The position numbers and the translations under genes are program-made. The notes beneath the pieces are model-generated. The model was not told the origin of the DNA, searched no databases, and worked only from the letters and a program-made list of their open reading frames with translations. From IMG/VR virus record IMGVR_UViG_3300036770_004723, positions 62,001-126,000 of that record: a stretch of DNA of 64,000 nt; one strand, written 5' to 3'. This document shows, one piece after another, positions 3,061-63,897 of this stretch. Position 1 is the stretch's first letter, and each line of letters starts with the position of its first letter.

Positions 3061-3855
3061 TTAATTCTCCTTTTTAAATAAATAGATGTCGGAGGGTTTT
3101 CTTTTTTGTTGGAAAAAATACCTGCCTTCCGATATCATTTTTTGCTTCATCTTAGTTGAGACCATTCTATTCGAATAATAGATCGGCAAGGAATTAAGAG
3201 TTTTCTCGTACAGATTAAAACTATATATTCCAACACTGTCATTTAAAACTTCAAACAAATACTCTTCTAAGGCAGTATGGGCTTTTATACTATCTTCCGT
3301 ATCAAGGGAAAGATAATTATGCCGTTCATACACTAGATGGGCTGAAATTGCATGAATATAACTATCTACGAAATTTCTGGCATCTGTTCCCGCGAAGAAT
3401 TTTAAAAGCAATATAGAGATAAGATCATCAAATATCTTTACGTATGTGCTTTCATTAAAGTCCGGTGAATAATCATTACTCTCAACATGAAAGTTTTTTC
3501 TTAATTCGATACAAACTTTTATTATTTCAGGTGAACTATTACTTTTTATTGATTGCTTTGATACCTTATTATACAGCTCACTATATTCATAGTCAGTTAT
3601 ATCAAACAGGTCTTTGGTAATCAAATCCCTTAAAAGGAAAGCTCCGTACTGATTAAACATACCATTAGCAAACAAGGCTGGCAATTTATCAGGTAACGAG
3701 TTTAATACTTTATAAATTCGATCTACTTCACACTGTATCTTTTCCTTTAACGTAGATTCAAAGAAAGACAAAGGCTTTGTTCTAAACCTGTGGTAAACTA
3801 AAAAGTCAGATAAACGGGCACAACTTTTATGGTAAAAATTACGCAACTTTATCAC
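3061..3855 (-). CDS. Hypothetical protein
   Basis: 264-aa ORF with GAGG SD. Confidence 0.7.
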   Translation of the reverse strand: MIKLRNFYHKSCARLSDFLVYHRFRTKPLSFFESTLKEKIQCEVDRIYKVLNSLPDKLPALFANGMFNQYGAFLLRDLITKDLFDITDYEYSELYNKVSKQSIKSNSSPEIIKVCIELRKNFHVESNDYSPDFNESTYVKIFDDLISILLLKFFAGTDARNFVDSYIHAISAHLVYERHNYLSLDTEDSIKAHTALEEYLFEVLNDSVGIYSFNLYEKTLNSLPIYYSNRMVSTKMKQKMISEGRYFFQQKRKPSDIYLFKKEN

Positions 3856-3859
3856 GGTA

Positions 3860-5716
3860 TTACCTCAAAAATCTTTTAGCTTTAGCTGCAATACTAGAAA
3901 GATCTGTGGTTGTGTTTGAAGTTAATAATGGAGCATTACCACTACGTTTCATCGCACGTACAGCCTTAAATATTTTATCATTGATTTTTCTGTTTTCAGC
4001 AGCTTGATTAAATACATGGTGCTTTTTACCACCACCACCTACAGTAAACAATTCAGAGTCTCCGCCAAAATTATGCCGTAGTAAACTTTGCTTACTACCT
4101 TGCAGTATAGTGCTAAAGCCGTGATCTTTATCAGAATTTATTTTTCGTAAAGAATTATCACTACTAAAAGAACCCATACCTCCACCTTCACCGCCTTCTG
4201 GATTTCCTGCTATTTCAGTAAGGCGCTTTTTATAATCAGTTAGCTGTCTTTGTATTGCAAGATCTTCATCTCGATCCATAAGCAACTTGTCTAAATTCAT
4301 ACCTCCAGCGGCGGCCATCATTCTGATAGGAACTGGAATACCTGCCGCTGTCATACGATCAAGAATATCCATAAATGCAGCATCCTGCTCAGGCTTTAAA
4401 CTTTTCGCCCAATGTACTGTAGGTATAAGAAGTTTAGATCCATCTTGCATTAAACGCAATCGTTCTTCGGTATTACCATCCATCAAGCCTTCTTTACGTA
4501 AGATTTTTCCTTTTCTCATTGTAAATCCATGCAACAATGAAACTAAAGGAAACACTTTATCGTAAAAAACATTTCTTGTTTGAGTATCACGATATGCGCG
4601 AAGTGTTTCAGTAAACACTGTCATAGCGCCTTCCATCGTTTGATAACTTGCATCACCACTCAAAAAAGCTTCGCTGATGCCCAATGCCCGCATTTTATGT
4701 GGGTTAGTTTGATCCCAAATATCTGTGACTTTCCAGAAATCACCACCTGGTCTCAATTCGCTGACACTAATGCCTAAACGTGTGGCAACCACAGCACCGA
4801 TTGGATCTGCATCTGCATCCAAAAACAAATCTGTTGCCTGATCGTAATCTTCCGGTGTAGGTTCCCAACCTTCTTCACCTAACATAATGTGCATGATTGC
4901 ACGTTGACGCCGACCACTTTCTATTAAAGTACCACGATATAAATTCTTTTCAATCAACCAAAGAGGCAATACACGTTTGTAGTAACTAACACCTTCACCA
5001 AATGAAAAAGTTTTACGTGGAACATAAATAGTTCCTACAGGATCTAATTCAACTTGGCCTGACATTAGTTTGCTTACAAACTCTTCACCTAAACTTTTCT
5101 TTATCTGGTCTATACGTGGAGAAGCCAAACTGAGTGTTTTTCTAAATTCAGGATCTATATCAAGATACATAATAGGATCTTGACTGTACAAAGGTAAAGT
5201 ATGAATGGTTATATTTTCGTATTTATGGCACATTAGGTCAATAAATGATTTCTTTTTACGATCATATAAAATGCTGGCACAAAAAGCGCCTGTAACTTGA
5301 TGGTCAACACTCATGCGAGGCATAGCAGTTCTTAAATTTAAGATTTCAACCGCTTGCCTGTAGTGATCTAGGTACTTATCTTCAGCACCACCTAAACTAA
5401 ATTCTGAAAAAGGTAAAGTACTATAAAGGTCAACACATGATCCACAAACAGGATCATGCCAGTACATATCTCGATAAACTCGAAATAATTTTTGATCTTT
5501 AAGATCACTATCCATACCTTCTAACAGTAGACTAGTATCCAGATTTACATCTAGTCCTCCTACTCTAGCTCCTGCACCGGAACCCGTACTACTTTCACTT
5601 TTAAATGAGTTTTGAGTTTTCTTGTGTTTCTTATCTTCTATATGTTTTTTTGAGCTAATACCTAAAACGCTAGATTTATCTTCTTTAGGTTTAAATGTTT
5701 TTTTAAAGTCAAACAT
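3860..5716 (-). CDS. Portal protein
   Basis: YRDMYWHDPVCGSCVD and GVSYYKRVLPLW portal-like motifs, size, near TerL; start moved to ATG 5716 (GGAG SD, promoter motif at 5748-5757). Confidence 0.75.
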   Translation of the reverse strand: MFDFKKTFKPKEDKSSVLGISSKKHIEDKKHKKTQNSFKSESSTGSGAGARVGGLDVNLDTSLLLEGMDSDLKDQKLFRVYRDMYWHDPVCGSCVDLYSTLPFSEFSLGGAEDKYLDHYRQAVEILNLRTAMPRMSVDHQVTGAFCASILYDRKKKSFIDLMCHKYENITIHTLPLYSQDPIMYLDIDPEFRKTLSLASPRIDQIKKSLGEEFVSKLMSGQVELDPVGTIYVPRKTFSFGEGVSYYKRVLPLWLIEKNLYRGTLIESGRRQRAIMHIMLGEEGWEPTPEDYDQATDLFLDADADPIGAVVATRLGISVSELRPGGDFWKVTDIWDQTNPHKMRALGISEAFLSGDASYQTMEGAMTVFTETLRAYRDTQTRNVFYDKVFPLVSLLHGFTMRKGKILRKEGLMDGNTEERLRLMQDGSKLLIPTVHWAKSLKPEQDAAFMDILDRMTAAGIPVPIRMMAAAGGMNLDKLLMDRDEDLAIQRQLTDYKKRLTEIAGNPEGGEGGGMGSFSSDNSLRKINSDKDHGFSTILQGSKQSLLRHNFGGDSELFTVGGGGKKHHVFNQAAENRKINDKIFKAVRAMKRSGNAPLLTSNTTTDLSSIAAKAKRFLR

Positions 5717-16132: not shown

Positions 16133-19100
16133 TCAGTTTTTAGCCTTTTTCTTTTTGGCCGATTTTTTAGTTTCGGCAATAGAAGCGTTCATTAGCTTTA
16201 TATACTTATTTACAGATTCACTCAATGAAGAGGAAATACGCGGATTAGGATTTTTTAAATCTTTCTTCCAACCTTTAATATCAGCCTGCGCAGTCTTTAG
16301 CTTATCTTTAATAGTATTAAGCTCTAGCTTAGCCAAGCTACGCAACTTTCTTTCAATAATATAGGTTGCGCGTTCTCGATCAATCTTTAATGTTTTTGCT
16401 GCGTAGGTATCTGGATCATCTTTGTCCAAAGCCTTTTTCATTACCTCCAATACTTTATCTTTATTTATAACAGCAAACATTTGTGTTTCATATTCCCAAA
16501 TGTCACGCTCACGTTTGCTAATAACGTTTTCGAGATATTTTTGTTCTAAAACTATGCGGTATTTTACCCATTGGGTAATGTAATTACTAAAGTTTACATA
16601 AGCAAACTTTGTTTTCGTTTCATCGACATGGTTAACTACTAAACCTAAATTGTAGAATTGACTACCAGTTAAAATCTTTTTAACTTTTTCAGCTAAATCA
16701 TACAGGCCGTCGTCGTCAACACCGCGTTTAGGTACAACGTAGTAATATGCTCCGAATGCGCCAGCGTTCGGTCGCTTATCACCACAGTCGCTTACCCAAC
16801 GACTTACTCCAGGTAATTCACGAATTTTATCTCGCTTCTTTTCAACCATTTCTTCAGATTGAAAACCAGGTGCATAAGAAACAATTTCAATGATTTTATT
16901 TTTATAGTCAATATTTATCTTAGGGCGATATTTTATTGCCTTAGCTCGACCTGTTTTAATAAAATCTTCTAGTTCTTCTTTGGTAGAAACACATTCAGAT
17001 CCAAACGGCGCATTTATTCTTAAATGCTTGACACATTCTTCATCCGTAACTTTGCCTTTATTCAAAGCAATTTCAACCAACTTTGCAACACCTTCAATTT
17101 CAAAACTTGGATTACAGGCACGAACGCCATAGGCAATACCACCTTCGTTACCAATCAATAACATTGTTGGAAGCAATGAAGGCAAATATAATGGAATATC
17201 TTCACTGTCATCGAAGTTTTTAATTCTGGGAACAACTTCAAGATAACCACTATCAAGTAAAAACATTTTTGCGTAGTCGGCTAATCGCACTTCGGTATTA
17301 TGTACAATCATACCGTTCGCTGTATAAGAATTACTCACAGGAACAGTGAGATCGTAAGTAGGTTCATCTCCTATATACTCGATACGTTTGATAGGCACTA
17401 AGAAATAGTTCTTATCTAAAATATTAGTCAGTTTATCCACAAAAGTAGGGAAATATTTCCCTACAAATTTACCGACCTGTGTTAGCCAAAGTTTTAAAGA
17501 TTCTAAAGTCAATGGCATACTGCGTCCAGATAGTCCATATAGCATAGAGGCTATGTACTTAGGAATTGGATTGCCTTCTTCATCTTCTTGTTTACTCAGA
17601 ATGTCTTCATAATAAGATCGCACAACTTCAGGTAAGAAACTTAGTTTCTGATTATCATACGCCGAATTGAGTACATTACCGCTTTTACGTTCAGATAAAA
17701 ATCCGATTTCAGATTGAAATCTGTCGTGCATTAGTTTACTGCATAGATAAAGAGTGTCTTTAGTTTGTGCAAAAGGTAATCCAAATTTAGATACTAGAAT
17801 CGTCTGAAGTTGATCTAAAAGTTTGGAACTTTTGGATGTATACGTAACGCCGGACGCATGTGCAGATCCATCTCCTTCAAATAGTGAGGAAAGAAATGAA
17901 ACCATCTCGACTTTACTCGACATAAGTACGCATAGCGGAACTTCTTTCTCACGAGCAACACACGGAAAAATTCCATTAGCAGATAAAAAAGAAATTAAAT
18001 GCGTACTATTTATAGTACATTGGGCATACGGACGTTTAGCCCAATTTATACCATCAGGCTCACGCCATGTGACTGATACATGTACGTTTTCAAATAAAGA
18101 TTCAGTCAATTCTACAAATAAATCAACCATATCTTTATCAGAATTCATAAATTGGACTGTGTGTTTAGTAATGCTACCTTCTGAAATAACCAAACCTAAC
18201 CAAGTGGCGAATTCCGAAGACATTTTCTTGGGGAGACCTAATATCTTCATGGAAGAACTTCTACCTTCAATATCAGGCTGGTTTAAAAGTTTTGATCCTT
18301 TAGTCCATTTAATTTTAGGATCTCTTTTATAGCAAACTATGTCTCCTTCAGAAATATCTTCAATAGTTTTCCAACTAAAGTCTAGATTAGAATCTAAAGT
18401 AAGTAAAGGTTCATTACTTGTACCTTTAATTTTACCTAAGCGAGTTTCAACTTCAAAGATCTCACGAACACCACTGTCTAACCAGTGTGTAGCTAATTCA
18501 ACACCATCACGCGATTCAACTTTCAAAGAAATTTCTAGTTTGCGTTTAGGTGTCTTGCCTAAGACTTCAGGTATACGTCCAATAGGAAGTAAGCCTAATT
18601 CAGAACTAACTAAAGTATCAGCGGTAAAACAATAACGCTGGGCGGCAGCATTATCAATCGGTGAACCCCAGTTTCCACGACCTTGCGCAAGTTTTGGAAA
18701 AGTATTTGCAATAGTAACTAACGCGCCATAGCAGGCGCTATTATGCGCAAGCATTACTCTTAAACTGTTATCTTGTGAATTACGTCCAGTAGCAATCAAC
18801 ATGTTTTCATTACCTTTAACAGTAAAATCATACATTGGAATTGCTTTTTTACTTTTAACCAGTTTAATACTACGTACTGCTAAATATCCAGCAGTAGGTA
18901 ATCCTTCAATATAATCTCCATGATGTGAGGCATGTTCAGATCTATCAAGAACTACGATATTGTCCGGTCTATTATTTTCACGATCACCGTCACTATGATG
19001 ATAAATTTCGTCAGTGTCTTTATCATCATACAAGTAAGCTCCAGACAACTCATGAAGATTACAAGATACATGCGTATTCAGCGAAAGTTTATGGTAAGAT

Positions 19101-45739: not shown

Positions 45740-46369
45740 TTAAATGACGTAACCTAAGGTCATAATACTATTAAAAATACTTTCAGAAGTTTCGGAGATC
45801 GTTTGCCCAGCAATATCAACAGTAACATGGTTTTTAGGCATAAGAGTGTGATCAAAACTACCGTTAATTATTCTTTCGTATGCCAAAGAGACTTGTTTTT
45901 TCTTAGTAGAATATTCTTCTTCTATCCTATCATCGAAGACTTCTAGATCTTTTCCACGACTGTTTGACATATAAAATAAAATGTCAGGACGCATACTACG
46001 CAAATCACACATATCAATACAGTTAGCAAAGTGTTTTTCTTCTACGCCTTTACCACCACATTGGTAAGCATAAGTTGAATAAAACCATCTATCACAAACA
46101 ACTATAGCTTCAGTTTTCAATAATTCACGTATTTGCGTTGAAAGTTGCTTACGAGAAGCAAACATCAAAAGCAATTCAGTAACAGGACTTACTGATTCTT
46201 CATAATTGTCTTTAACAGTATCTCGAATTTTTTCCGCCATAGGTGTACCACCGGGTTCACGAAAAATAAAGATTCTCTTATTTGGATACTTGGCCGAAAG
46301 ATTCTTAATTAATTGAAAAGATTGCACAGATTTACCGCAATTATCAAGACCTTCGAAAACAATGAACAT
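45740..46369 (-). CDS. tmk: Thymidylate kinase
   Basis: FIVFEGLDNCGKS, REPGGT, ELLLMFASR, CDRW..STYAYQ; start at ATG 46369 with GAGG SD. Confidence 0.95.
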   Translation of the reverse strand: MFIVFEGLDNCGKSVQSFQLIKNLSAKYPNKRIFIFREPGGTPMAEKIRDTVKDNYEESVSPVTELLLMFASRKQLSTQIRELLKTEAIVVCDRWFYSTYAYQCGGKGVEEKHFANCIDMCDLRSMRPDILFYMSNSRGKDLEVFDDRIEEEYSTKKKQVSLAYERIINGSFDHTLMPKNHVTVDIAGQTISETSESIFNSIMTLGYVI

Positions 46370-46380
46370 AATTACCTCGC

Positions 46381-46408
46381 AAAAAAGGCGGCTCAAGTGG
46401 CCGCCTTT
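46381..46408 (-). terminator. Terminator closing the tRNA/ncRNA transcript
   Basis: AAAGGCGGC-CACTTGA-GCCGCCTTTTTT. Confidence 0.75.
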
Positions 46409-46416
46409 ACGTTTAA

Positions 46417-47668
46417 CTAACTTGGATCTGAGTATCTGGCAGTTTTGTAATATGCACCAGAAACTTTTCTAACGTGGCCGAACCTTTTCTGATAGCCAGA
46501 TACTCAGATCAAAATTAGCTAGAGGCTGTTGTCTTATTTTCCATGCAACACAAACTTCGTTACTTTATAAGGCAACAGCTTTTTCTATTGGTTTATTTTA
46601 TAGACTAATGTTTAGCACATTAAAATAATCGCGATCATCAATTCAGTTAATGCTATTCGAGGCTAAACATTCAATAGATCTTTACCTCAGTGAGTTTTTA
46701 TAATGCGCAGGCTTGTGCGCAATTTGTACGGCCTTTTCCAGTTTACTATCATATAGTGATTGATAGTAAAAAAGTGGCCGGAGTTTTAATTGCCTACTAC
46801 ACATCAAAGACGTATATGATCGATAGTATTTAATGTGTACCAAAATTTTTAAAAGAAAAACAAATATCAAGTGCATAATAAACTTACTCTGTTGAGGTGA
46901 CTGTATAATGTGATAGGTACACGATCTTGGTAGTTACATAAAAATACCGAACGCAATAATTGAAAATGGCGTAACAATTAAAGGTTTAAGATTAGTATCA
47001 GCAATTTGCAGGTCGTACAAATTGAGAATTCGTGTCACATTTTCTTTGACTAGAGCTTTAATGGAGAAAAACCCTATTCAAGGTTTTAACAATGAACGGT
47101 CGAGAGGACGCAATCTGACACCCCAGTTTAATCAGATAAAACAATTCATTGTTTAATAAACTAATACAGTCGAAATCTTTAAGGGATGGCTTACCTTGCA
47201 AGCTGGAACCCCTTCCATTTTAAGGTAAGCCATTTAAAAAAATGTTTTGATCACACTGCTAGACAATCGCAGGCTGGCGACCCACGCAAGAGATCCTACT
47301 GCCTTTAGTCTTCGGCGATCATTGGAATCCTTATCTGTCAAAGCGAACAAATTTAAAATTCTACGCAAAATGTTTTCTTGCCATACAGCAGAGAATACAA
47401 AATGGTGAACCCGAAATTTTTCGTAGATAATACACGCTAGATAAGATGACTAGTCTTACCAACACAAGCACAGTAAGTAATATAAGATGCCATGTTGCTG
47501 CCGTGTTAGAGTCTAGCAGTGTGATCAAAACATTTTCATTAAATTGATTTTAAAGTAAACACTAATGGCTTAGTACGTGTCAGCAATGCGTTTGAACTGC
47601 CCGATGTCACCTAAAAGACTTCAACGCACCTACATCTTTTATTTTAGAAGTGCTTACATTAAAATTAA
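46417..47668 (-). ncRNA. Array of eight abutting stem-closed structured RNA domains
   Basis: Closing inverted repeats at 46417-46518, 46525-46579, 46584-46678, 46684-46898, 46899-47171, 47186-47233, 47239-47536, 47544-47668; no credible ORF. Confidence 0.65.
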
Positions 47669-47682
47669 CTTTTATAATAAAT

Positions 47683-47759
47683 TGGAGCGTGATATGGGAA
47701 TCGAACCCATGATGACGGAGTGGAAGTCCGACGGTTTACCTAGCTAACTCTAATCACGC
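47683..47759 (-). tRNA. tRNA-Gly(TCC)
   Basis: GCGTGAT/ATCACGC-T-CCA, loop CTTCCAC, GGTTCGATTCC; weak D-stem. Confidence 0.85.
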
Positions 47760-47770
47760 GCGTTATTAGA

Positions 47771-47899
47771 TTAGGTAACTGCAAAGTAAATTAAAGCTTA
47801 GTTTCGCACTTACAAATGTTGGCGATTTACCTCTAATCTATTCTTTACACAAAGCGTAAAGCCCGAAATTTAATTCTGCTACGATACACAATTACCTAA
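47771..47899 (-). ncRNA. Structured RNA between the two tRNAs
   Basis: TTAGGTAATTG/CAGTTACCTAA closing stem, internal CTTTACGC/GTGTAAAG; G-U pairs on the minus strand. Confidence 0.55.
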
Positions 47900-47914
47900 A
47901 AAACTTTTATAAAA

Positions 47915-47991
47915 TGGTGGCCCCAACTGGACTTGAACCAGTGACCCATCGCTTATGAGGCAATCGCTCTAACCAACTGAGCTATGGGGCC
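47915..47991 (-). tRNA. tRNA with CAT anticodon, Ile2 (lysidine) type
   Basis: GGCCCCATAGCTCAGTTGGTTAGAGC...CTCATAA...GGTTCAAGTCCAG..GGGGCCACCA, closely resembles ileX. Confidence 0.9.
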
Positions 47992-48331: not shown

Positions 48332-48468
48332 CCTATAGCACTATAATCTTATTTAAGACTTAGGTGCCAGCTAGGTGCCATGATTAAATAAGATCTTAAT
48401 ACGTTTCAGTTTCATATCTTTATATTTACAGTTTTCGAAAAACAGCATTTTCAGAATTTAAGGCAATT

Positions 48469-50841: not shown

Positions 50842-52335
50842 TTAATCATCGTCGCCTACGATCTTGTCTTTACTGCGTTTAACAATTTGATCTTTGAATC
50901 GTTGGGTGCCTTTACCACTTTCACAATGTTTAGCGCACCATGCACGAATATTACCAGCCTTCTTAAGACCTGCACGTTCACAAACTTCAGTGATCTGTTT
51001 TTTGTTACCTAAAACCAAGACCTTAAAGTCATCGTAGCTTAGTTTTTTAGCTCCATGTAAAGGTACATCAGGATGAAACTTAAGATTGTTTCTAGTGCCG
51101 TCAATGTAACCTAGCTGTTTAAGATATTCGAACGTATCAAAAACAGGATCAAAACCACGGGCTTGGCCATTACCATCACTTACCCAAACACGCGCCCATA
51201 CTTCTCTGTTAGGAATACCACCTAGTTTATTTTTGGTAGTACGTAAACAAATAAAACGATAAATATCTTTGCCGTCAGGCACTGTAACAGAACTTTCTTC
51301 CATTATGCCTTTATCAAGAACGAATCCGTAAGGCGCAGATCCACGAGAAGTAGATTTTATCCTCACGTCGCTGAAAAATTTTAAACTTTCTCCGCAACTT
51401 TCATACTCAGGATTTCCGTGCATAACAGCAGGACGTAAACGTAATTGGTTTACACCAAAAACAGTCATACGTTTTTTACGCATACCCGATCTGATTTTCT
51501 TAATACCTGTACTAAACATACGTGCTTGTTCGGCCATAGCATCATTGCGATCATCGTCATCTAGACCTTCAGGAAGCATTGCAGGATAACTATCAACGAT
51601 TGATACTGCTTGCATAAAACCGTCAGGGGCAGGAATGCGAATTTTATTTGTTTTAGTCAAATATTTAGTATCGTATAAGCCTGCAAGTTTTTTCTTATTT
51701 TCTTGTGTATGTTCGTAGATATACCAATACTGATCGCCAATTTTTTGTACATCAGGAAGGGCACGACGAAGTTTTGCTTGATATCTAAAAAAGTCTTCTC
51801 CGACATCAGGCATGTAATACCTGATTTTAGGTTTTACCAGCCAAGATCCTGTATCATCGTCTTTGATACCAAAGATTGTACTAGCATCAGATTTTAATCC
51901 AAGTGCTTCCATCATATTACTGATATACTCAATATCAGTAGATCCTTCGTAGTCGAAAATACTTGCTGCCATTTTTCTGTTTAATTCATCAATTGCGTTC
52001 TGAATCATACAAAGCAACGTCATAGTCAAAGTCGATTTACAACTTTGTTCACCACCATAAATGGTATACCAACCACCACCAACAATGCCGCCGTTAAGAA
52101 GTAAATCAAGAGCCAAAAGCCCTGTGGATAATCTTTTTTCATCTCGATCTACCAAACTACTGGATAAGCCATATTTCTTTTCAATTGAATCCAAAAGATC
52201 ATCAATATCTTCCGAAGGTGAATAAGTTTTGGCTCTTACAATAGCTTCATCTACGATTTCTTTAGATGATTTTTTTGTTTTCTTTTCAACTACAACAATT
52301 TCATCATCAACATTAAGTTTTTTCTTTTTGGCCAT
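50842..52335 (-). CDS. recA: RecA/UvsX-like recombinase
   Basis: STGLLALDLLL.GG, GGEQSCKST, IVDS, QARMFS, VNQLR, GESLKFFSDVRI, KNKL. Confidence 0.92.
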   Translation of the reverse strand: MAKKKKLNVDDEIVVVEKKTKKSSKEIVDEAIVRAKTYSPSEDIDDLLDSIEKKYGLSSSLVDRDEKRLSTGLLALDLLLNGGIVGGGWYTIYGGEQSCKSTLTMTLLCMIQNAIDELNRKMAASIFDYEGSTDIEYISNMMEALGLKSDASTIFGIKDDDTGSWLVKPKIRYYMPDVGEDFFRYQAKLRRALPDVQKIGDQYWYIYEHTQENKKKLAGLYDTKYLTKTNKIRIPAPDGFMQAVSIVDSYPAMLPEGLDDDDRNDAMAEQARMFSTGIKKIRSGMRKKRMTVFGVNQLRLRPAVMHGNPEYESCGESLKFFSDVRIKSTSRGSAPYGFVLDKGIMEESSVTVPDGKDIYRFICLRTTKNKLGGIPNREVWARVWVSDGNGQARGFDPVFDTFEYLKQLGYIDGTRNNLKFHPDVPLHGAKKLSYDDFKVLVLGNKKQITEVCERAGLKKAGNIRAWCAKHCESGKGTQRFKDQIVKRSKDKIVGDDD

Positions 52336-53550: not shown

Positions 53551-54579
53551 TTATTTATTTACAGATTTCGTAGATTTAAGATTTTCCATTATCTTAAGTT
53601 CTTCGTTTGTAAATACTTCTGGTAAGTCTAAATACAATCGTGCCAATCCATGAGGATCTGCACGTTTTGCAAATAGATACAACATTCTTAGTTCGCTGTT
53701 CACAGCATATTCTTCATCTAGATCTTCAGTTTCAGCACTTAAAATTTCATGTAGTGTGCTATCACCATCTTCTTCACCTGAAGCTAAAAGATAATCCATT
53801 GATGTAGAAAAATTAACAGACGTTTTATTGTCTGACATTATCTTTTTCTGATTTTGTGGAATAGTATAAGCTATTCCGTACTCATGTTCGCTGCTGTTAC
53901 AAGTTAAACTATTTAACATCCAATATTTTATATAACTTGTTAGTGCGCCTTTACTGCTATCATATTTATTCAAGGCCACTACAACATTACGCATAAAATT
54001 TTGAACTACATCCCGATAATCGTATGTATTACCTGTGTTAGTATCACGTAAATGTTTTGCTTGCGTATGGGAAAGTTTTATGTATTGGTCTACAATACTT
54101 GAGAAGTAGTCATAAAATTGCTTTAATGGAACACTAGGTAAAGTAACTGAAACAAACATGTCTTGTATGGAATTAGATCCTACTTCTTTAACATAGGGAT
54201 CCATCCTTTCTTTGTAGGAAATTCTTTTGCTTGAATCCGACAAATAACAATAATAAAGATCTAAAAAAGGTTTTCTATACTCTTCTAAAAATTTTTTAAC
54301 AAAAACATGTATAAAGCTTCTTTCGATCTTTAATTTTTTTATTAACTCAAGTTTTTTAACTCTATCTGTTGTTATGATGGCTTGACTTAAGTGATCGATG
54401 GTTTCATTTCTATCTAGTGCGCAGAATCTTCGTTTTTTATTCTTTATTACAGCGGTTAAAAGGTAACAAAGCTGACTATCAAATACATCTGTGTGTAGCA
54501 CTATAGGTTCCAATGCTTTGTATAAGAAACTATCCATGATTTCTTGTATTTGACCGCCGGTAAGATTTTCTTTGGTCAT
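53551..54579 (-). CDS. Phage RNA polymerase sigma factor
   Basis: YRDVVQNFMRNVVVALNKYDSSKGALTSYIKYWM matches region 2; STSMD...STLHEIL matches region 3; region 4 not evident. Confidence 0.8.
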   Translation of the reverse strand: MTKENLTGGQIQEIMDSFLYKALEPIVLHTDVFDSQLCYLLTAVIKNKKRRFCALDRNETIDHLSQAIITTDRVKKLELIKKLKIERSFIHVFVKKFLEEYRKPFLDLYYCYLSDSSKRISYKERMDPYVKEVGSNSIQDMFVSVTLPSVPLKQFYDYFSSIVDQYIKLSHTQAKHLRDTNTGNTYDYRDVVQNFMRNVVVALNKYDSSKGALTSYIKYWMLNSLTCNSSEHEYGIAYTIPQNQKKIMSDNKTSVNFSTSMDYLLASGEEDGDSTLHEILSAETEDLDEEYAVNSELRMLYLFAKRADPHGLARLYLDLPEVFTNEELKIMENLKSTKSVNK

Positions 54580-63614: not shown

Positions 63615-63897
63615 TAGTTGTTTGCCGGGTGTTGGGGTTCCGGGGAAATATTCTATAATGTATTAAAGCTATTCGCTTCGCTCATAGCTACTAATGTGTT
63701 GCAAGCTAACGCTTGCACTTTTTCTTTTCTTTTCTTTTCTTTTCTTTTCTTTTCTTTTCTTTTCTTTTCTTTTCTTTTCTTTTGATCTTTAGTTGTTTGC
63801 CGGGTGTTGGGTCCTGGAGTAATTGTTTATTAATGTGTTTTAGGTTGTTTCGCTTCGCTACACAACCAAAACGGATTGCAAGCGTTAGCTTGCATCC
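63615..63897. repeat. Two ~105-bp imperfect direct repeats with conserved hairpins flanking the microsatellite (origin-like)
   Basis: TAGTTGTTTGCCGGGTGTTGGG x2, TTCGCTTCGCT loops x2, TGCAAGC-N4-GCTTGCA x2. Confidence 0.75.
63718..63783. repeat. (CTTTT) x ~13 microsatellite
   Basis: Directly visible. Confidence 0.95.

What the first reader, a model, noticed from the sequence alone, without database searches (positions are those of the whole stretch)
46417..47991. 1.6-kb tiled array of about nine self-closed structured RNAs attached to two tRNAs
Seen: a region with no credible ORF in an otherwise gene-dense genome, covered almost end to end (gaps of about 0-15 nt) by domains each closed by its own inverted repeat: 46417-46518 (16-bp perfect core), 46525-46579, 46584-46678, 46684-46898, 46899-47171, 47186-47233 (12 bp), 47239-47536 (26 bp perfect), 47544-47668, tRNA-Gly, 47771-47899, tRNA-Ile2. 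A minus-strand terminator closes it at 46381-46408. G-U pairs mostly favour the minus (tRNA) strand; 46525-46579 is an exception. The units are not sequence repeats of each other. Established: phage tRNA clusters host ncRNAs of unknown function (T4 species I/II, GOLLD, ROOL). Inference: a polycistronic cassette processed into several distinct stable RNAs, perhaps decoys or anti-defence RNAs.
Basis: partly seen in the sequence, partly recalled or inferred. Interest (0 to 1): 0.82.

Follow-up and report, generated by a model that had tools for sequence, protein, structure and literature searches.

The report
Conserved structured-RNA cassette behind phage tRNAs
Behind two tRNA genes, a jumbo phage carries about 1.3 kb of independently folding RNA domains plus one overlooked 64-codon protein gene; evolution has preserved this cassette in distant relatives, it matches no known RNA family, and its function is unknown.

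Summary
Relatives recovered through the adjacent thymidylate kinase gene (seven distinct sequences plus two deep lineages) show that most domains are conserved structured RNAs. Helices keep pairing through double changes. G-U pairs favour the tRNA-sense (minus) strand. Identity to the window is 51-92%, although synonymous sites of the neighbouring tmk gene are saturated.

Two corrections are needed. The "domain" 46684-46898 is a conserved 64-aa protein gene (46682-46876, minus strand): it shows codon periodicity, dN/dS of 0.2-0.45, and a C-terminal motif kept in a lineage whose Tmk is only 43% identical. The domain 47544-47668 is not conserved; relatives have a 41-aa gene there.

No module matches any Rfam family, and each occurs once in the window.

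Best reading: this is the tail of a tRNA operon, made of insulated RNA modules (S0, M1, M2, M3, M5, M6, M7) and a small basic protein gene, ending at an intrinsic terminator just before tmk. It is probably cut into discrete stable RNAs by tRNA-processing enzymes and by RNase III at the 24-27 bp helices. Processing and any trans or anti-defence role are untested. A cis-regulatory role for the small gene and tmk is the main rival.

The parts
47915..47991 (-). tRNA with anticodon CAT, probably tRNA-Ile2 (lysidine type), with encoded CCA
   Evidence: ARAGORN and Rfam tRNA model, 69.6 bits. Best E. coli matches are annotated tRNA-Ile.
47771..47899 (-). S0: 129-nt inter-tRNA RNA closed by a 9-bp helix, very highly conserved
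   Evidence: 91% mean column identity in the three-way alignment with L011 and L018, and 92% to L011, against 72% for the tmk coding sequence. One compensatory A-U to G-C change in the closing helix. Too little variation for a covariation test.
47683..47759 (-). tRNA-Gly (UCC)
   Evidence: 100% identical in L011.
47544..47668 (-). Non-conserved spacer. Relatives carry a 41-aa protein gene here, so this may be its decayed remnant.
   Evidence: Alignments. The relatives' ORF shows a coding pattern (variable columns 6/5/27 by codon position; dN/dS 0.06-0.22). The fold z-score is only about -2.1.
47239..47536 (-). M1: 298-nt multi-branched RNA domain closed by a perfect 26-bp helix; invariant hairpin loop CUAGUCA and motif UAGACU
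   Evidence: Inverted repeat. The closing helix is kept in four long-form sequences, with every departure a G-U pair on this strand. A short form (about 228 nt) in L009, L024 and L012 has a different closing-helix sequence but the same architecture. Analogous long-stem domains lie at L004:16388-16574 and L026:2805-3180.
47186..47233 (-). M2: 12-13 bp hairpin with a conserved 22-24 nt loop that includes GGGGUUCCAGCUUGC
   Evidence: 98.7% of cells paired; 6 pairs with changes on both sides against 0 in every slid control; 0 of 500 shuffles reach this. In L004 (16573-16636) the loop motif GGGGUUCCA is kept on a completely different stem.
46899..47171 (-). M3: 273-nt domain closed by the 8-bp helix GACUGUAU/AUACAGUC, with an inner helix CUUGUGA..CACG/CGUG..UCACAAG and a variable interior
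   Evidence: RNAalifold pair counts: U-A changes to C-G in L009 and L024 in the closing helix, and the inner helix has compensatory changes in the window. In L004 the equivalent closure is GCGGCAU/AUGCCGC, about 296 nt apart and just before the small ORF. No codon periodicity (66/61/67).
46682..46876 (-). Small protein gene: 64 aa, basic, with a hydrophobic N-terminal helix and a conserved C-terminal VQ[IV][AE]HKPAHYK[NH]SL. It also contains a covarying RNA hairpin.
   Evidence: Open in all relatives, truncated in L024. Variable columns 27/16/42 by codon position. dN/dS 0.20-0.45. Homologue in remote L004:16964-17161. The same ORF was called as a gene on public contigs of both the window's lineage and the L004 lineage (P0020, P0021, P0022). 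No Pfam or PHROG family.
46607..46671 (-). It is missing from relative L024, so it is dispensable and modular.
   Evidence: The window-only fold is kept in 76% of changed cells against 20-56% in slid controls, with 23 double changes. It folds only on the tRNA-sense strand (20 pairs against 6). Deletion in L024 seen.
46525..46579 (-). M6: hairpin with an inner stem
   Evidence: 67% of changed cells kept against 23-49% in slid controls, with 21 double changes. Structure and compensations.
46415..46520 (-). M7: about 24-27 bp irregular helix capped by an invariant apical region (CAGAAAAGGUUCGGCCACGUUAGAA...UUCUGGUAC.UAUUAC)
   Evidence: 98.3% of cells paired; 14 of 36 pairs with changes on both sides against 0-2 in slid controls; 0 of 500 shuffles. 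24 G-U and 9 mismatches on this strand against 3 and 20 on the other. Model R1 finds the syntenic L004:17309-17413 at 31 bits, E about 9e-7, with filters off.
46381..46408 (-). Intrinsic terminator (GC-rich hairpin plus U6), ending about 8 nt before the tmk ribosome-binding site
   Evidence: Fold. Conserved in all relatives, with a fully compensated variant in L012. Equivalent terminators precede tmk in L004 and L026.
45740..46372 (-). tmk (thymidylate kinase), the invariant downstream neighbour of the cassette
   Evidence: Pfam PF02223, 3e-25. The adjacency is kept in all three deep lineages.
48343..48400 (-). Conserved upstream element, about 94% identical in relatives; a candidate promoter or processing signal for the tRNA-RNA operon
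   Evidence: Unique in the window.

Best explanation
The region is the conserved tail of a phage tRNA operon, read on the minus strand. In order it contains: tRNA-Ile2(CAU), S0 RNA, tRNA-Gly, a lineage-specific spacer, M1, M2, M3, a 64-aa basic protein gene, M5, M6, M7, an intrinsic terminator, and then tmk.

Shown: each M module is an RNA structure selected on the tRNA-sense strand and insulated by its own closing helix, so the modules fold independently. Modules can be lost or swapped without disturbing their neighbours (M5 is absent in L024; M1 has long and short forms). One unit is a real small protein gene.

Inferred: the primary transcript is cut by RNase P and the 3' tRNA-processing enzymes at the tRNAs, which would release S0. 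Host RNase III is inferred to cut the 24-27 bp helices that close M1 and M7. The products would be several discrete, exonuclease-resistant RNAs and a short mRNA for the small protein, bracketed by M2/M3 and M5/M6. Loops are more conserved than stems (M2, M7, the M1 CUAGUCA loop), which suggests the RNAs are recognised by specific partners and act in trans, possibly together with the co-encoded basic protein.

The cellular target and purpose are unknown.
For: Homologous cassettes were found upstream of tmk in seven distinct relatives and two deep lineages.

Covariation: 64 of 206 RNAalifold pairs carry compensatory double changes. M7 and M2 exceed all shuffled and slid controls. Folds predicted from the window alone for M2, M5, M6 and M7 are kept in 64-76% of changed cells, against 19-56% in slid controls.

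Strand: G-U pairs are enriched and mismatches depleted on the tRNA-sense strand. All departures in the M1 closing helix are G-U on that strand.

Constraint: tmk synonymous sites are saturated (pS 0.63-0.72), whereas the modules keep 51-92% identity.

The RNA modules show no codon periodicity (M3 and M5-M7 tested), unlike the two small ORFs.

The long closing helices keep their length, though not their sequence, in L004 (36- and 32-nt arms) and L026 (26- and 30-nt arms).

A terminator ends the unit in every lineage.
Against: There are no expression data: transcription, processing sites and product stability are all inferred. No promoter was identified.

The cassette is always glued to tmk, with no room for a promoter between the terminator and the tmk ribosome-binding site. 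This fits a cis-regulatory role at least as well for M7.

The interiors of M1 and M3 are poorly conserved, and their whole-domain folds fail the comparative test.

Only about seven independent sequences are available, so there is no R-scape-grade statistic. The alignments used for searches were fitted to the model.

The remote homology to L004 rests on one significant model hit (M7), synteny, the shared ORF and short motifs. For L026 it rests on architecture only.
Confidence: 0.5

Rival explanations
1. The modules are cis-acting parts of messenger RNA. They would be processing sites, 5' and 3' stabilising hairpins and translational control elements for the small genes (41 aa in relatives, 64 aa here). 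M7 plus the terminator would form an attenuator, or a put-like antitermination element, that sets how much transcription reads through into tmk.
For: The cassette-terminator-tmk adjacency is invariant across three deep lineages, while the upstream tRNAs, HNH genes and ORFs vary. There is no space for a promoter between the U-tract and the tmk ribosome-binding site. The M1 5' arm starts at the stop codon of the upstream ORF in relatives and in L004. M3 ends 15-26 nt before the small ORF start. Reduced dS inside the small ORF shows that RNA structure overlaps coding sequence.
Against: About 1 kb of structure serves about 100 codons. Loops and unpaired motifs are more conserved than stems, which simple RNase III sites or stabiliser hairpins do not need. 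No alternative pairing between M7 and the terminator covaries: the L012 terminator sequence changed while M7 did not. The M7 UAUUAC motif does not covary with the variable tmk initiation region. S0 lies between two tRNAs, far from any ORF.
Confidence: 0.3
2. The whole stretch from M1 to M7 is one large ornate RNA of about 1.1 kb, comparable to GOLLD or ROOL. It would fold as a multi-domain particle, possibly self-assembling through palindromic loops, rather than being a set of separate RNAs.
For: It lies next to tRNAs in a phage, as many GOLLD and ROOL genes do (PMC12286853, PMC5737381). The module order is conserved in three lineages. The invariant M1 loop CUAGUCA contains the palindrome CUAG. 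A single terminator ends the unit.
Against: A translated gene under purifying selection sits in the middle. M5 can be deleted and M1 swapped between long and short forms. No conserved long-range pairing between modules was predicted, apart from a 4-bp ACCU/AGGU contact. There is no match to the GOLLD or ROOL models, even at E below 10.
Confidence: 0.1
3. The unit is a type I toxin-antitoxin-like or otherwise tightly silenced small membrane-protein gene. The surrounding structures would keep its mRNA untranslatable until it is processed, as in hok/sok.
For: The 64-aa product has a hydrophobic N-terminal helix and a basic tail (AlphaFold helix 2-27). L026 has a 66-aa ORF (start at 3312; the gene call 3315-3512 gives 65 aa) at the same place with a longer hydrophobic N-terminus. 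The ORF sits between large structured domains.
Against: The hydrophobic stretch is only about 12 residues in the window family. No antisense promoter or terminator was found on the plus strand. The plus strand folds worse and carries the mismatches. The gene is truncated in L024 without loss of the RNAs. No similarity to any known toxin family.
Confidence: 0.06
4. The repeats act at the DNA level, as a replication origin, packaging site, recombination or homing hot spot, or miniature transposon with terminal inverted repeats.
For: M1 is bounded by perfect 26-bp inverted repeats. HNH homing endonuclease genes and variable tRNA content lie next door in relatives. The region sits among replication and recombination genes.
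Against: Pairing is maintained through G-U on one strand only, which has no meaning for duplex DNA or cruciforms. Each module is single-copy in the window, and no copies were found in GenBank phages. Position and order are fixed across lineages, which does not fit a mobile element.
Confidence: 0.03

Closest known systems
Phage T4 tRNA-cluster stable RNAs (species I/II, RNAC and RNAD)
   Same: Small non-tRNA RNAs encoded inside or beside a phage tRNA cluster on the same strand. They are presumably released by the tRNA-processing machinery, and their function is still unknown (PMC9697503). A homing endonuclease sits in the same cluster (T4 SegB, PMC2330249; HNH genes in L015, L024 and L026 here).
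   Different: No sequence similarity: a distant BLAST against 50,697 phage records hit only the tRNA. The array here is far larger (about 1.1 kb, seven modules), includes a protein gene, and ends at a terminator abutting tmk. Only S0 is truly flanked by tRNAs.
GOLLD and ROOL large ornate RNAs
   Same: Large, intricately structured RNAs of unknown function, frequently found in phages or prophages next to tRNA genes (PMC5737381, PMC12286853).
   Different: No match to either Rfam model, even at E below 10. This region is modular, interrupted by a translated ORF, and its modules can be lost individually.
RNase III processing hairpins of phage T7 early and lambda transcripts (established knowledge, not tested here)
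   Same: Long irregular helices of 20 bp or more placed between cistrons of a polycistronic phage transcript. After cleavage they leave protective terminal hairpins.
   Different: The loops and apical regions here are invariant, and the domains enclosed by the helices are 100-300 nt of conserved structure, not simple hairpins. Cleavage is untested.
Cis-acting antitermination RNAs such as HK022 put (recalled, not tested)
   Same: A conserved structured RNA immediately upstream of an intrinsic terminator that must be read through to express the next gene (M7, terminator, tmk).
   Different: M7 is a single long helix with one apical three-way region, not the two-hairpin put fold.
Catalogue of about 8,500 candidate structured RNAs from IMG/VR (PMC10690425)
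   Same: Short covarying phage intergenic motifs (mean 67 nt), many of them terminators, tRNA-like structures or elements upstream of genes. Individual modules such as M2, M6 or M7 could be in that list.
   Different: This could not be checked, because no supplementary files are held. That work describes isolated motifs of 29-151 nt, not a tiled cassette.

Membership tests
Any Rfam 15 family (including GOLLD, ROOL, riboswitches, ribozymes, T-box, known sRNAs) | Score at or above the family's gathering threshold against its covariance model | tested here: not met
   Only the two tRNAs pass the threshold in the window, and only tRNAs in seven related loci. In E-value mode up to 5-10, nothing credible appears, and no hit recurs at the same module in the window and in relatives.
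GOLLD/ROOL-like large ornate RNA | A single continuous non-coding RNA of more than 500 nt with conserved multi-domain structure | tested here: inconclusive
   The multi-domain conserved structure is present, but a translated ORF interrupts it and modules are individually dispensable. Transcript length is unknown.
GOLLD/ROOL-like large ornate RNA | Genomic association with tRNA genes in phages or prophages | tested here: met
   The cassette lies directly downstream of tRNA genes in the window, L011, L012, L016, L018, L020, L021, L024 and L004. L009 and L010 begin inside a truncated tRNA.
T4-type tRNA-cluster stable RNA (RNAC/RNAD) | Non-tRNA RNA gene embedded among tRNA genes on the same strand | tested here: met
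   S0 (47771-47899) lies between tRNA-CAT and tRNA-Gly or tRNA-Arg in the window, L011 and L018, at 91-92% identity.
T4-type tRNA-cluster stable RNA (RNAC/RNAD) | Sequence or structure homology to T4 RNAC/RNAD | tested here: not met
   Megablast and distant blastn against GenBank phages (T4-type phages appear among the hits) matched only the tRNA.
T4-type tRNA-cluster stable RNA (RNAC/RNAD) | Accumulates as a discrete stable RNA during infection | not testable with these tools
   The phage is uncultured and no transcriptome is available.
Structured RNA under selection (generic) | Base pairs maintained by compensatory changes beyond controls, on one strand | tested here: met
   Strong for M2, M5, M6, M7 and for the closing and inner helices of M1 and M3. 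Weak for S0 (too conserved) and for the interiors of M1 and M3.
Protein-coding gene (46682-46876) | Open frame kept across divergent relatives, codon-position bias of substitutions, and dN/dS below 1 | tested here: met
   27/16/42; 0.20-0.45; L004 homologue.
Intrinsic (Rho-independent) terminator | GC-rich hairpin followed by a U-tract on the transcribed strand | tested here: met
   46381-46408 forms a 9-bp stem followed by U6. It is conserved and compensated in relatives. The simple scanner missed it.
RNase III substrate | About two helical turns (20 bp or more) of near-continuous double-stranded RNA | tested here: met
   M1 closing helix is 26 bp perfect. M7 is 24 paired positions over 27 nt. 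Comparable lengths occur in L004 and L026.
RNase III substrate | Cleavage by RNase III | not testable with these tools
   Needs an in vitro cleavage assay or a comparison of rnc mutant and wild-type hosts.
Riboswitch or attenuator leader of tmk | Mutually exclusive pairing between the sensor and the terminator (an expression platform) | tested here: not met
   No covarying alternative pairing was found. The M7 apical AAAGG..CGGCCAC resembles the terminator 5' arm in the window, but the L012 terminator changed without any change in M7.
Type I toxin-antitoxin | Small hydrophobic toxin plus an overlapping or adjacent antisense RNA | tested here: inconclusive
   A small protein with a short hydrophobic N-terminus is present. 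No antisense promoter or terminator was found, and the opposite strand folds worse. Toxicity is untested.

The most novel reading that the evidence does not exclude
The cassette encodes a previously undescribed family of phage ribonucleoprotein or RNA-only particles. On this reading, several ornate RNAs (M1, M3, M7, S0) are made from a tRNA operon, recognised through their invariant loops, and perhaps bound by the co-encoded 64-aa basic protein. They would act in trans on a host system linked to tRNA or nucleotide metabolism or to immunity, for example as decoys for RNA- or tRNA-targeting defence nucleases.
Probability: 0.18. Interest if true: 0.85.

Novelty: new variant of a known kind. Interest (0 to 1): 0.62.

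Why it matters
Phage tRNA clusters have been known for fifty years to carry extra stable RNAs whose function is still unknown, and the large ornate RNAs GOLLD and ROOL share that neighbourhood. This cassette gives a compact, deeply conserved and modular example. It has seven distinct folds, clear covariation and an associated small protein, all in jumbo phages known only from metagenomes.

If the modules are trans-acting, they are new RNA families and candidates for RNA-based host takeover or counter-defence. If they are cis-acting, they show an unusually elaborate RNA control region for a nucleotide-kinase gene.

The work also corrects the annotation. A 64-codon gene, and in relatives a 41-codon gene, lie hidden in what looks like non-coding sequence.

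Tried and rejected
- BLAST of the region against GenBank phages, near and distant modes: only the tRNA matched.
- IMG/VR scans with Tmk, a Tmk alignment and UvsX: only the source contig and one deep lineage, L004/L005, were found.
- A 17-mer scan of IMG/VR gave one chance match inside a coding region (L014).
- Rfam in gathering and E-value modes on the window and on relatives: nothing but tRNAs.
- Models R1 and R2 with default filters did not reach L004, L005 or L026, and found no second copy in the window. With filters off, only M7 reached significance in L004.
- Phage NCTB, the closest named relative by UvsX (59%), has no synteny downstream of recA, no tRNA and no tmk there.
- Tmk-homologue loci L025 and L027 are bacterial and irrelevant. 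L029 is about 99.5% identical to L004 and added nothing.
- Pfam, PHROGs, a 5.8-billion-protein word search and a full HMMER profile search for the 64-aa protein: only its own lineage was found.
- The AlphaFold model of the 64-aa protein had mean pLDDT 61, so no fold search was run.
- A riboswitch-like interplay between M7 and the terminator, and pairing between M7 and the tmk initiation region, were both rejected for lack of covariation.
- A transposon or DNA-level reading was rejected on the G-U strand asymmetry.
- The supplements of the IMG/VR structured-RNA catalogue are not held, so overlap could not be checked.
Full report
**Where the window comes from**

The window is part of IMG/VR contig IMGVR_UViG_3300036770_004723, a 286.6-kb jumbo-phage genome. 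Almost all genes are on the minus strand. The finding lies in a block of replication and nucleotide-metabolism genes: a UvsX-like recombinase, primase, PD-(D/E)XK nuclease, UvdE, NADAR and thymidylate kinase. The closest named phage, by UvsX only (59%), is phage NCTB, followed by Erwinia jumbo phages.

**Checking the observation**

- ARAGORN and Rfam find exactly two tRNAs, both on the minus strand: Gly-UCC at 47683-47759 and a CAT tRNA at 47915-47991.
The 26/26 perfect pair that closes 47239-47536 is the longest perfect inverted repeat in the 64 kb.
- Three of the window's 23 perfect repeats of 12 nt or more lie in these 1.3 kb.
- Fold energies beat dinucleotide shuffles strongly for 46417-46518 (z = -8.1), 47239-47536 (-5.5) and 47186-47233 (-4.1), and modestly (about -2 to -3) for most others. 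These values are biased, because the boundaries were drawn at repeats. The real test is comparative.

**Finding relatives**

DNA searches of GenBank phages returned only the tRNA, and the JGI metagenome scans returned nothing. The route that worked was the adjacent thymidylate kinase. A protein search gave five clusters at 68-74% identity. Their members and contigs yielded seven distinct versions of the upstream region: window, L011, L018, L010, L009, L024 and L012, at 69-80% identity to the window.

Two deep lineages were also found. L004/L005/L029 has a Tmk 43% identical to the window's. L026 has a Tmk 34% identical.

Synonymous sites of tmk are saturated between the window and these relatives (pS 0.63-0.72). 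Unconstrained sequence should therefore be unalignable. Instead, identity to the closest relative L011 is 92% (S0), 92% (M7), 88% (M2), 80% (M1), 77% (M5), 69% (M6) and 66% (M3), against 72% for the tmk coding sequence. Against L010 and L012 the modules fall as low as 51% (M1, whose short form replaces the long one in L012) and 57% (M5).

**RNA structure is what is conserved**

- RNAalifold on the eight-row alignment A4 predicts 206 pairs, 64 of them with compensatory double changes.
- Folds predicted from the window sequence alone, then scored in the relatives, are kept in 64-76% of changed cells for M2, M5, M6 and M7. Slid controls give 19-56%.
- On model-fitted alignments, M7 has 98.3% of cells paired and 14 of 36 pairs changed on both sides (slid controls 0-2; 0 of 500 shuffles). 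M2 has 98.7% paired and 6 such pairs (controls 0).
- The strand is the tRNA strand. There, helices contain many G-U pairs and few mismatches; on the other strand the reverse holds. For M7 the counts are 24 G-U and 9 mismatches against 3 and 20. M5 forms 20 pairs against 6.
- In the M1 closing helix, every departure from Watson-Crick pairing in the relatives is a G-U on this strand. This excludes a DNA-level explanation.

For the two large domains, the window's whole minimum-energy fold is not conserved (35% kept, no better than slid controls). Their closing helices and several internal helices are conserved:

- M3 is closed by GACUGUAU/AUACAGUC, with a U-A to C-G switch in L009 and L024. It has an inner helix that is compensated in the window itself.
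- M1 exists as a long form (window, L011, L018, L010) and a short form (L009, L024, L012). The closing-helix sequences differ, but the branch layout is the same, and both forms keep the invariant motifs AAGACUAGUCAUC and UAGACU.

First, the unit 46684-46898 is a protein gene. The frame 46682-46876 (-) is open in every relative; in L024 an 11-nt deletion truncates it. Variable alignment columns fall 27/16/42 on codon positions 1/2/3, whereas M3 gives 66/61/67 and M5-M7 give 42/46/46. dN/dS is 0.20-0.45.

The deep lineage L004 has a 65-aa homologue at the same place. It shares the N-terminal IFIFFL segment and the C-terminal VQ.(A/E)HKPAHYK(N/H)SL. The same ORF was called as a gene on public contigs of both the window's lineage and the L004 lineage.

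The protein is basic, has no Pfam or PHROG family, and gives only a low-confidence two-helix model. Its dS is lower than that of tmk, and it contains a covarying hairpin, so RNA structure overlaps the coding sequence.

Second, 47544-47668 is not conserved. All relatives with sequence there carry a 41-aa gene with a clean coding signature (6/5/27; dN/dS 0.06-0.22). The window's stretch has no ORF and only a marginal fold.

**Architecture across deep lineages**

L004 repeats the module order with almost no sequence identity:

- a long-stem domain (36-nt arms, 16388-16574);
- an M2-like hairpin that keeps the loop motif GGGGUUCCA on an unrelated stem;
- an M3-like domain closed by GCGGCAU/AUGCCGC, about 296 nt apart;
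- the small ORF;
- two hairpins;
- an M7-like helix with 32-nt arms, found by model R1 at 31 bits (E about 9e-7, filters off);
- a terminator, and then tmk.

L026 shows the same layout: 26-nt arms around 324 nt, a 15-bp perfect hairpin domain, a 66-aa ORF (start at 3312; the gene call 3315-3512 gives 65 aa) with a hydrophobic N-terminus and a strong Shine-Dalgarno sequence, further hairpins, a helix with 30-nt arms, a terminator and tmk. No sequence homology could be shown for L026.

The part upstream of the cassette is fluid. tRNA sets differ (Ile2/Met, Gly, Arg, Pro), and HNH endonuclease genes come and go.

**What it is not**

No module reaches any Rfam 15 family, in the window or in relatives, even in permissive mode. 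Each module is single-copy in the window. No expression platform linking M7 to the terminator covaries.

**Mechanism**

Shown: this is a minus-strand unit of insulated, independently evolving RNA folds plus a small gene. It is bounded upstream by tRNAs and downstream by a conserved intrinsic terminator that abuts the tmk ribosome-binding site.

Inferred, in three steps:

- The unit is co-transcribed with the tRNAs. There is no room for a promoter after the upstream 109-aa ORF. A 56-nt element at 48343-48400, 94% conserved, is a candidate start signal.
- tRNA-processing enzymes release S0.
- RNase III cuts the conserved-length helices of M1 and M7, leaving discrete stable RNAs and a short structured mRNA.

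Because loops are more conserved than stems, I favour specific trans partners, possibly including the co-encoded basic protein. I put this at about 0.5.

The main rival (about 0.3) is a purely cis-acting control region for the small gene and tmk. The invariant cassette-terminator-tmk adjacency supports it.

Three other readings are less likely, for the reasons listed with each rival:

- a single GOLLD-like RNA of about 1.1 kb;
- a hok-like silenced small-protein locus;
- a DNA-level element.

**Comparison with known systems and novelty**

Functionally and positionally, the nearest precedents are the T4 tRNA-cluster RNAs RNAC and RNAD, whose function is still unknown (PMC9697503), and the tRNA-associated ornate RNAs GOLLD and ROOL (PMC5737381, PMC12286853). 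Membership in either was tested by sequence and model searches and was not met.

Individual short modules could already be listed among the roughly 8,500 IMG/VR candidate structured RNAs (PMC10690425), but that could not be checked.

I therefore rate the cassette as a new variant of a known kind: new RNA folds and a new small protein in the familiar "extra RNAs next to phage tRNAs" setting. It is notable for its size, its modularity and its depth of conservation. All statements about processing and biological role remain to be tested.

Noticed in passing
window 48343-48400 (-); L011:3868-3923; L012:224-281: A 56-nt intergenic element about 94% identical across relatives. It has two direct GGCACCTA copies inside an 11-nt inverted repeat and is unique in the window. 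In L012 and L018 it lies about 25 nt upstream of tRNA-CAT; in the window and L011 a 107-109 aa ORF lies in between. It may be the promoter or a processing signal of the tRNA-RNA operon, or a scar derived from a tRNA 5' half.
   Followed up: partly
window 63700-63894: An 18-bp perfect inverted repeat encloses a pentanucleotide microsatellite (about 14 copies of CTTTT on the plus strand), in a stretch without long ORFs. Fold z-score is -6.9.
   Followed up: partly
L004:9911-12793 and L005:9911-12142, versus window 50842-52335: The UvsX-like recombinase is 497 aa in the window but 960 and 743 aa in the relatives, with the homology split into two blocks. This suggests an intein or other insertion. 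Erwinia jumbo phages also match in two pieces.
   Followed up: no
L015:1898-2650, L024:2410-2931, L026:1580-2143: HNH_3 endonuclease genes are inserted within the tRNA block of some relatives, and the tRNA repertoire differs between otherwise similar phages (Ile2/Met-CAT, Gly, Arg, Pro). The L009 and L010 assemblies break inside tRNA-Arg. This resembles T4 segB in its tRNA cluster.
   Followed up: partly
L011:about 4320-4365: A truncated tRNA 5' half (acceptor, D-arm and anticodon arm of a CAT tRNA) lies just upstream of the intact tRNA-CAT of L011. That intact tRNA is only 69% identical to the window's CAT tRNA, so the two phages probably carry different CAT tRNAs (Met versus Ile2).
   Followed up: no
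L011:4689-4814 and equivalents in L009, L010, L012, L015, L016, L018-L021: A conserved 41-aa acidic helical peptide gene (MEVDHELVDKLLKQM...) lies between the last tRNA and M1. It is absent from the window and from L024. It has only weak PHROG hits.
   Followed up: partly
window 53551-54579 (-): A 342-aa protein gives a sub-threshold match to sigma-70 region 2 (E = 2e-4). It may be a phage-encoded sigma-like factor, which would bear on which promoters drive this region.
   Followed up: no
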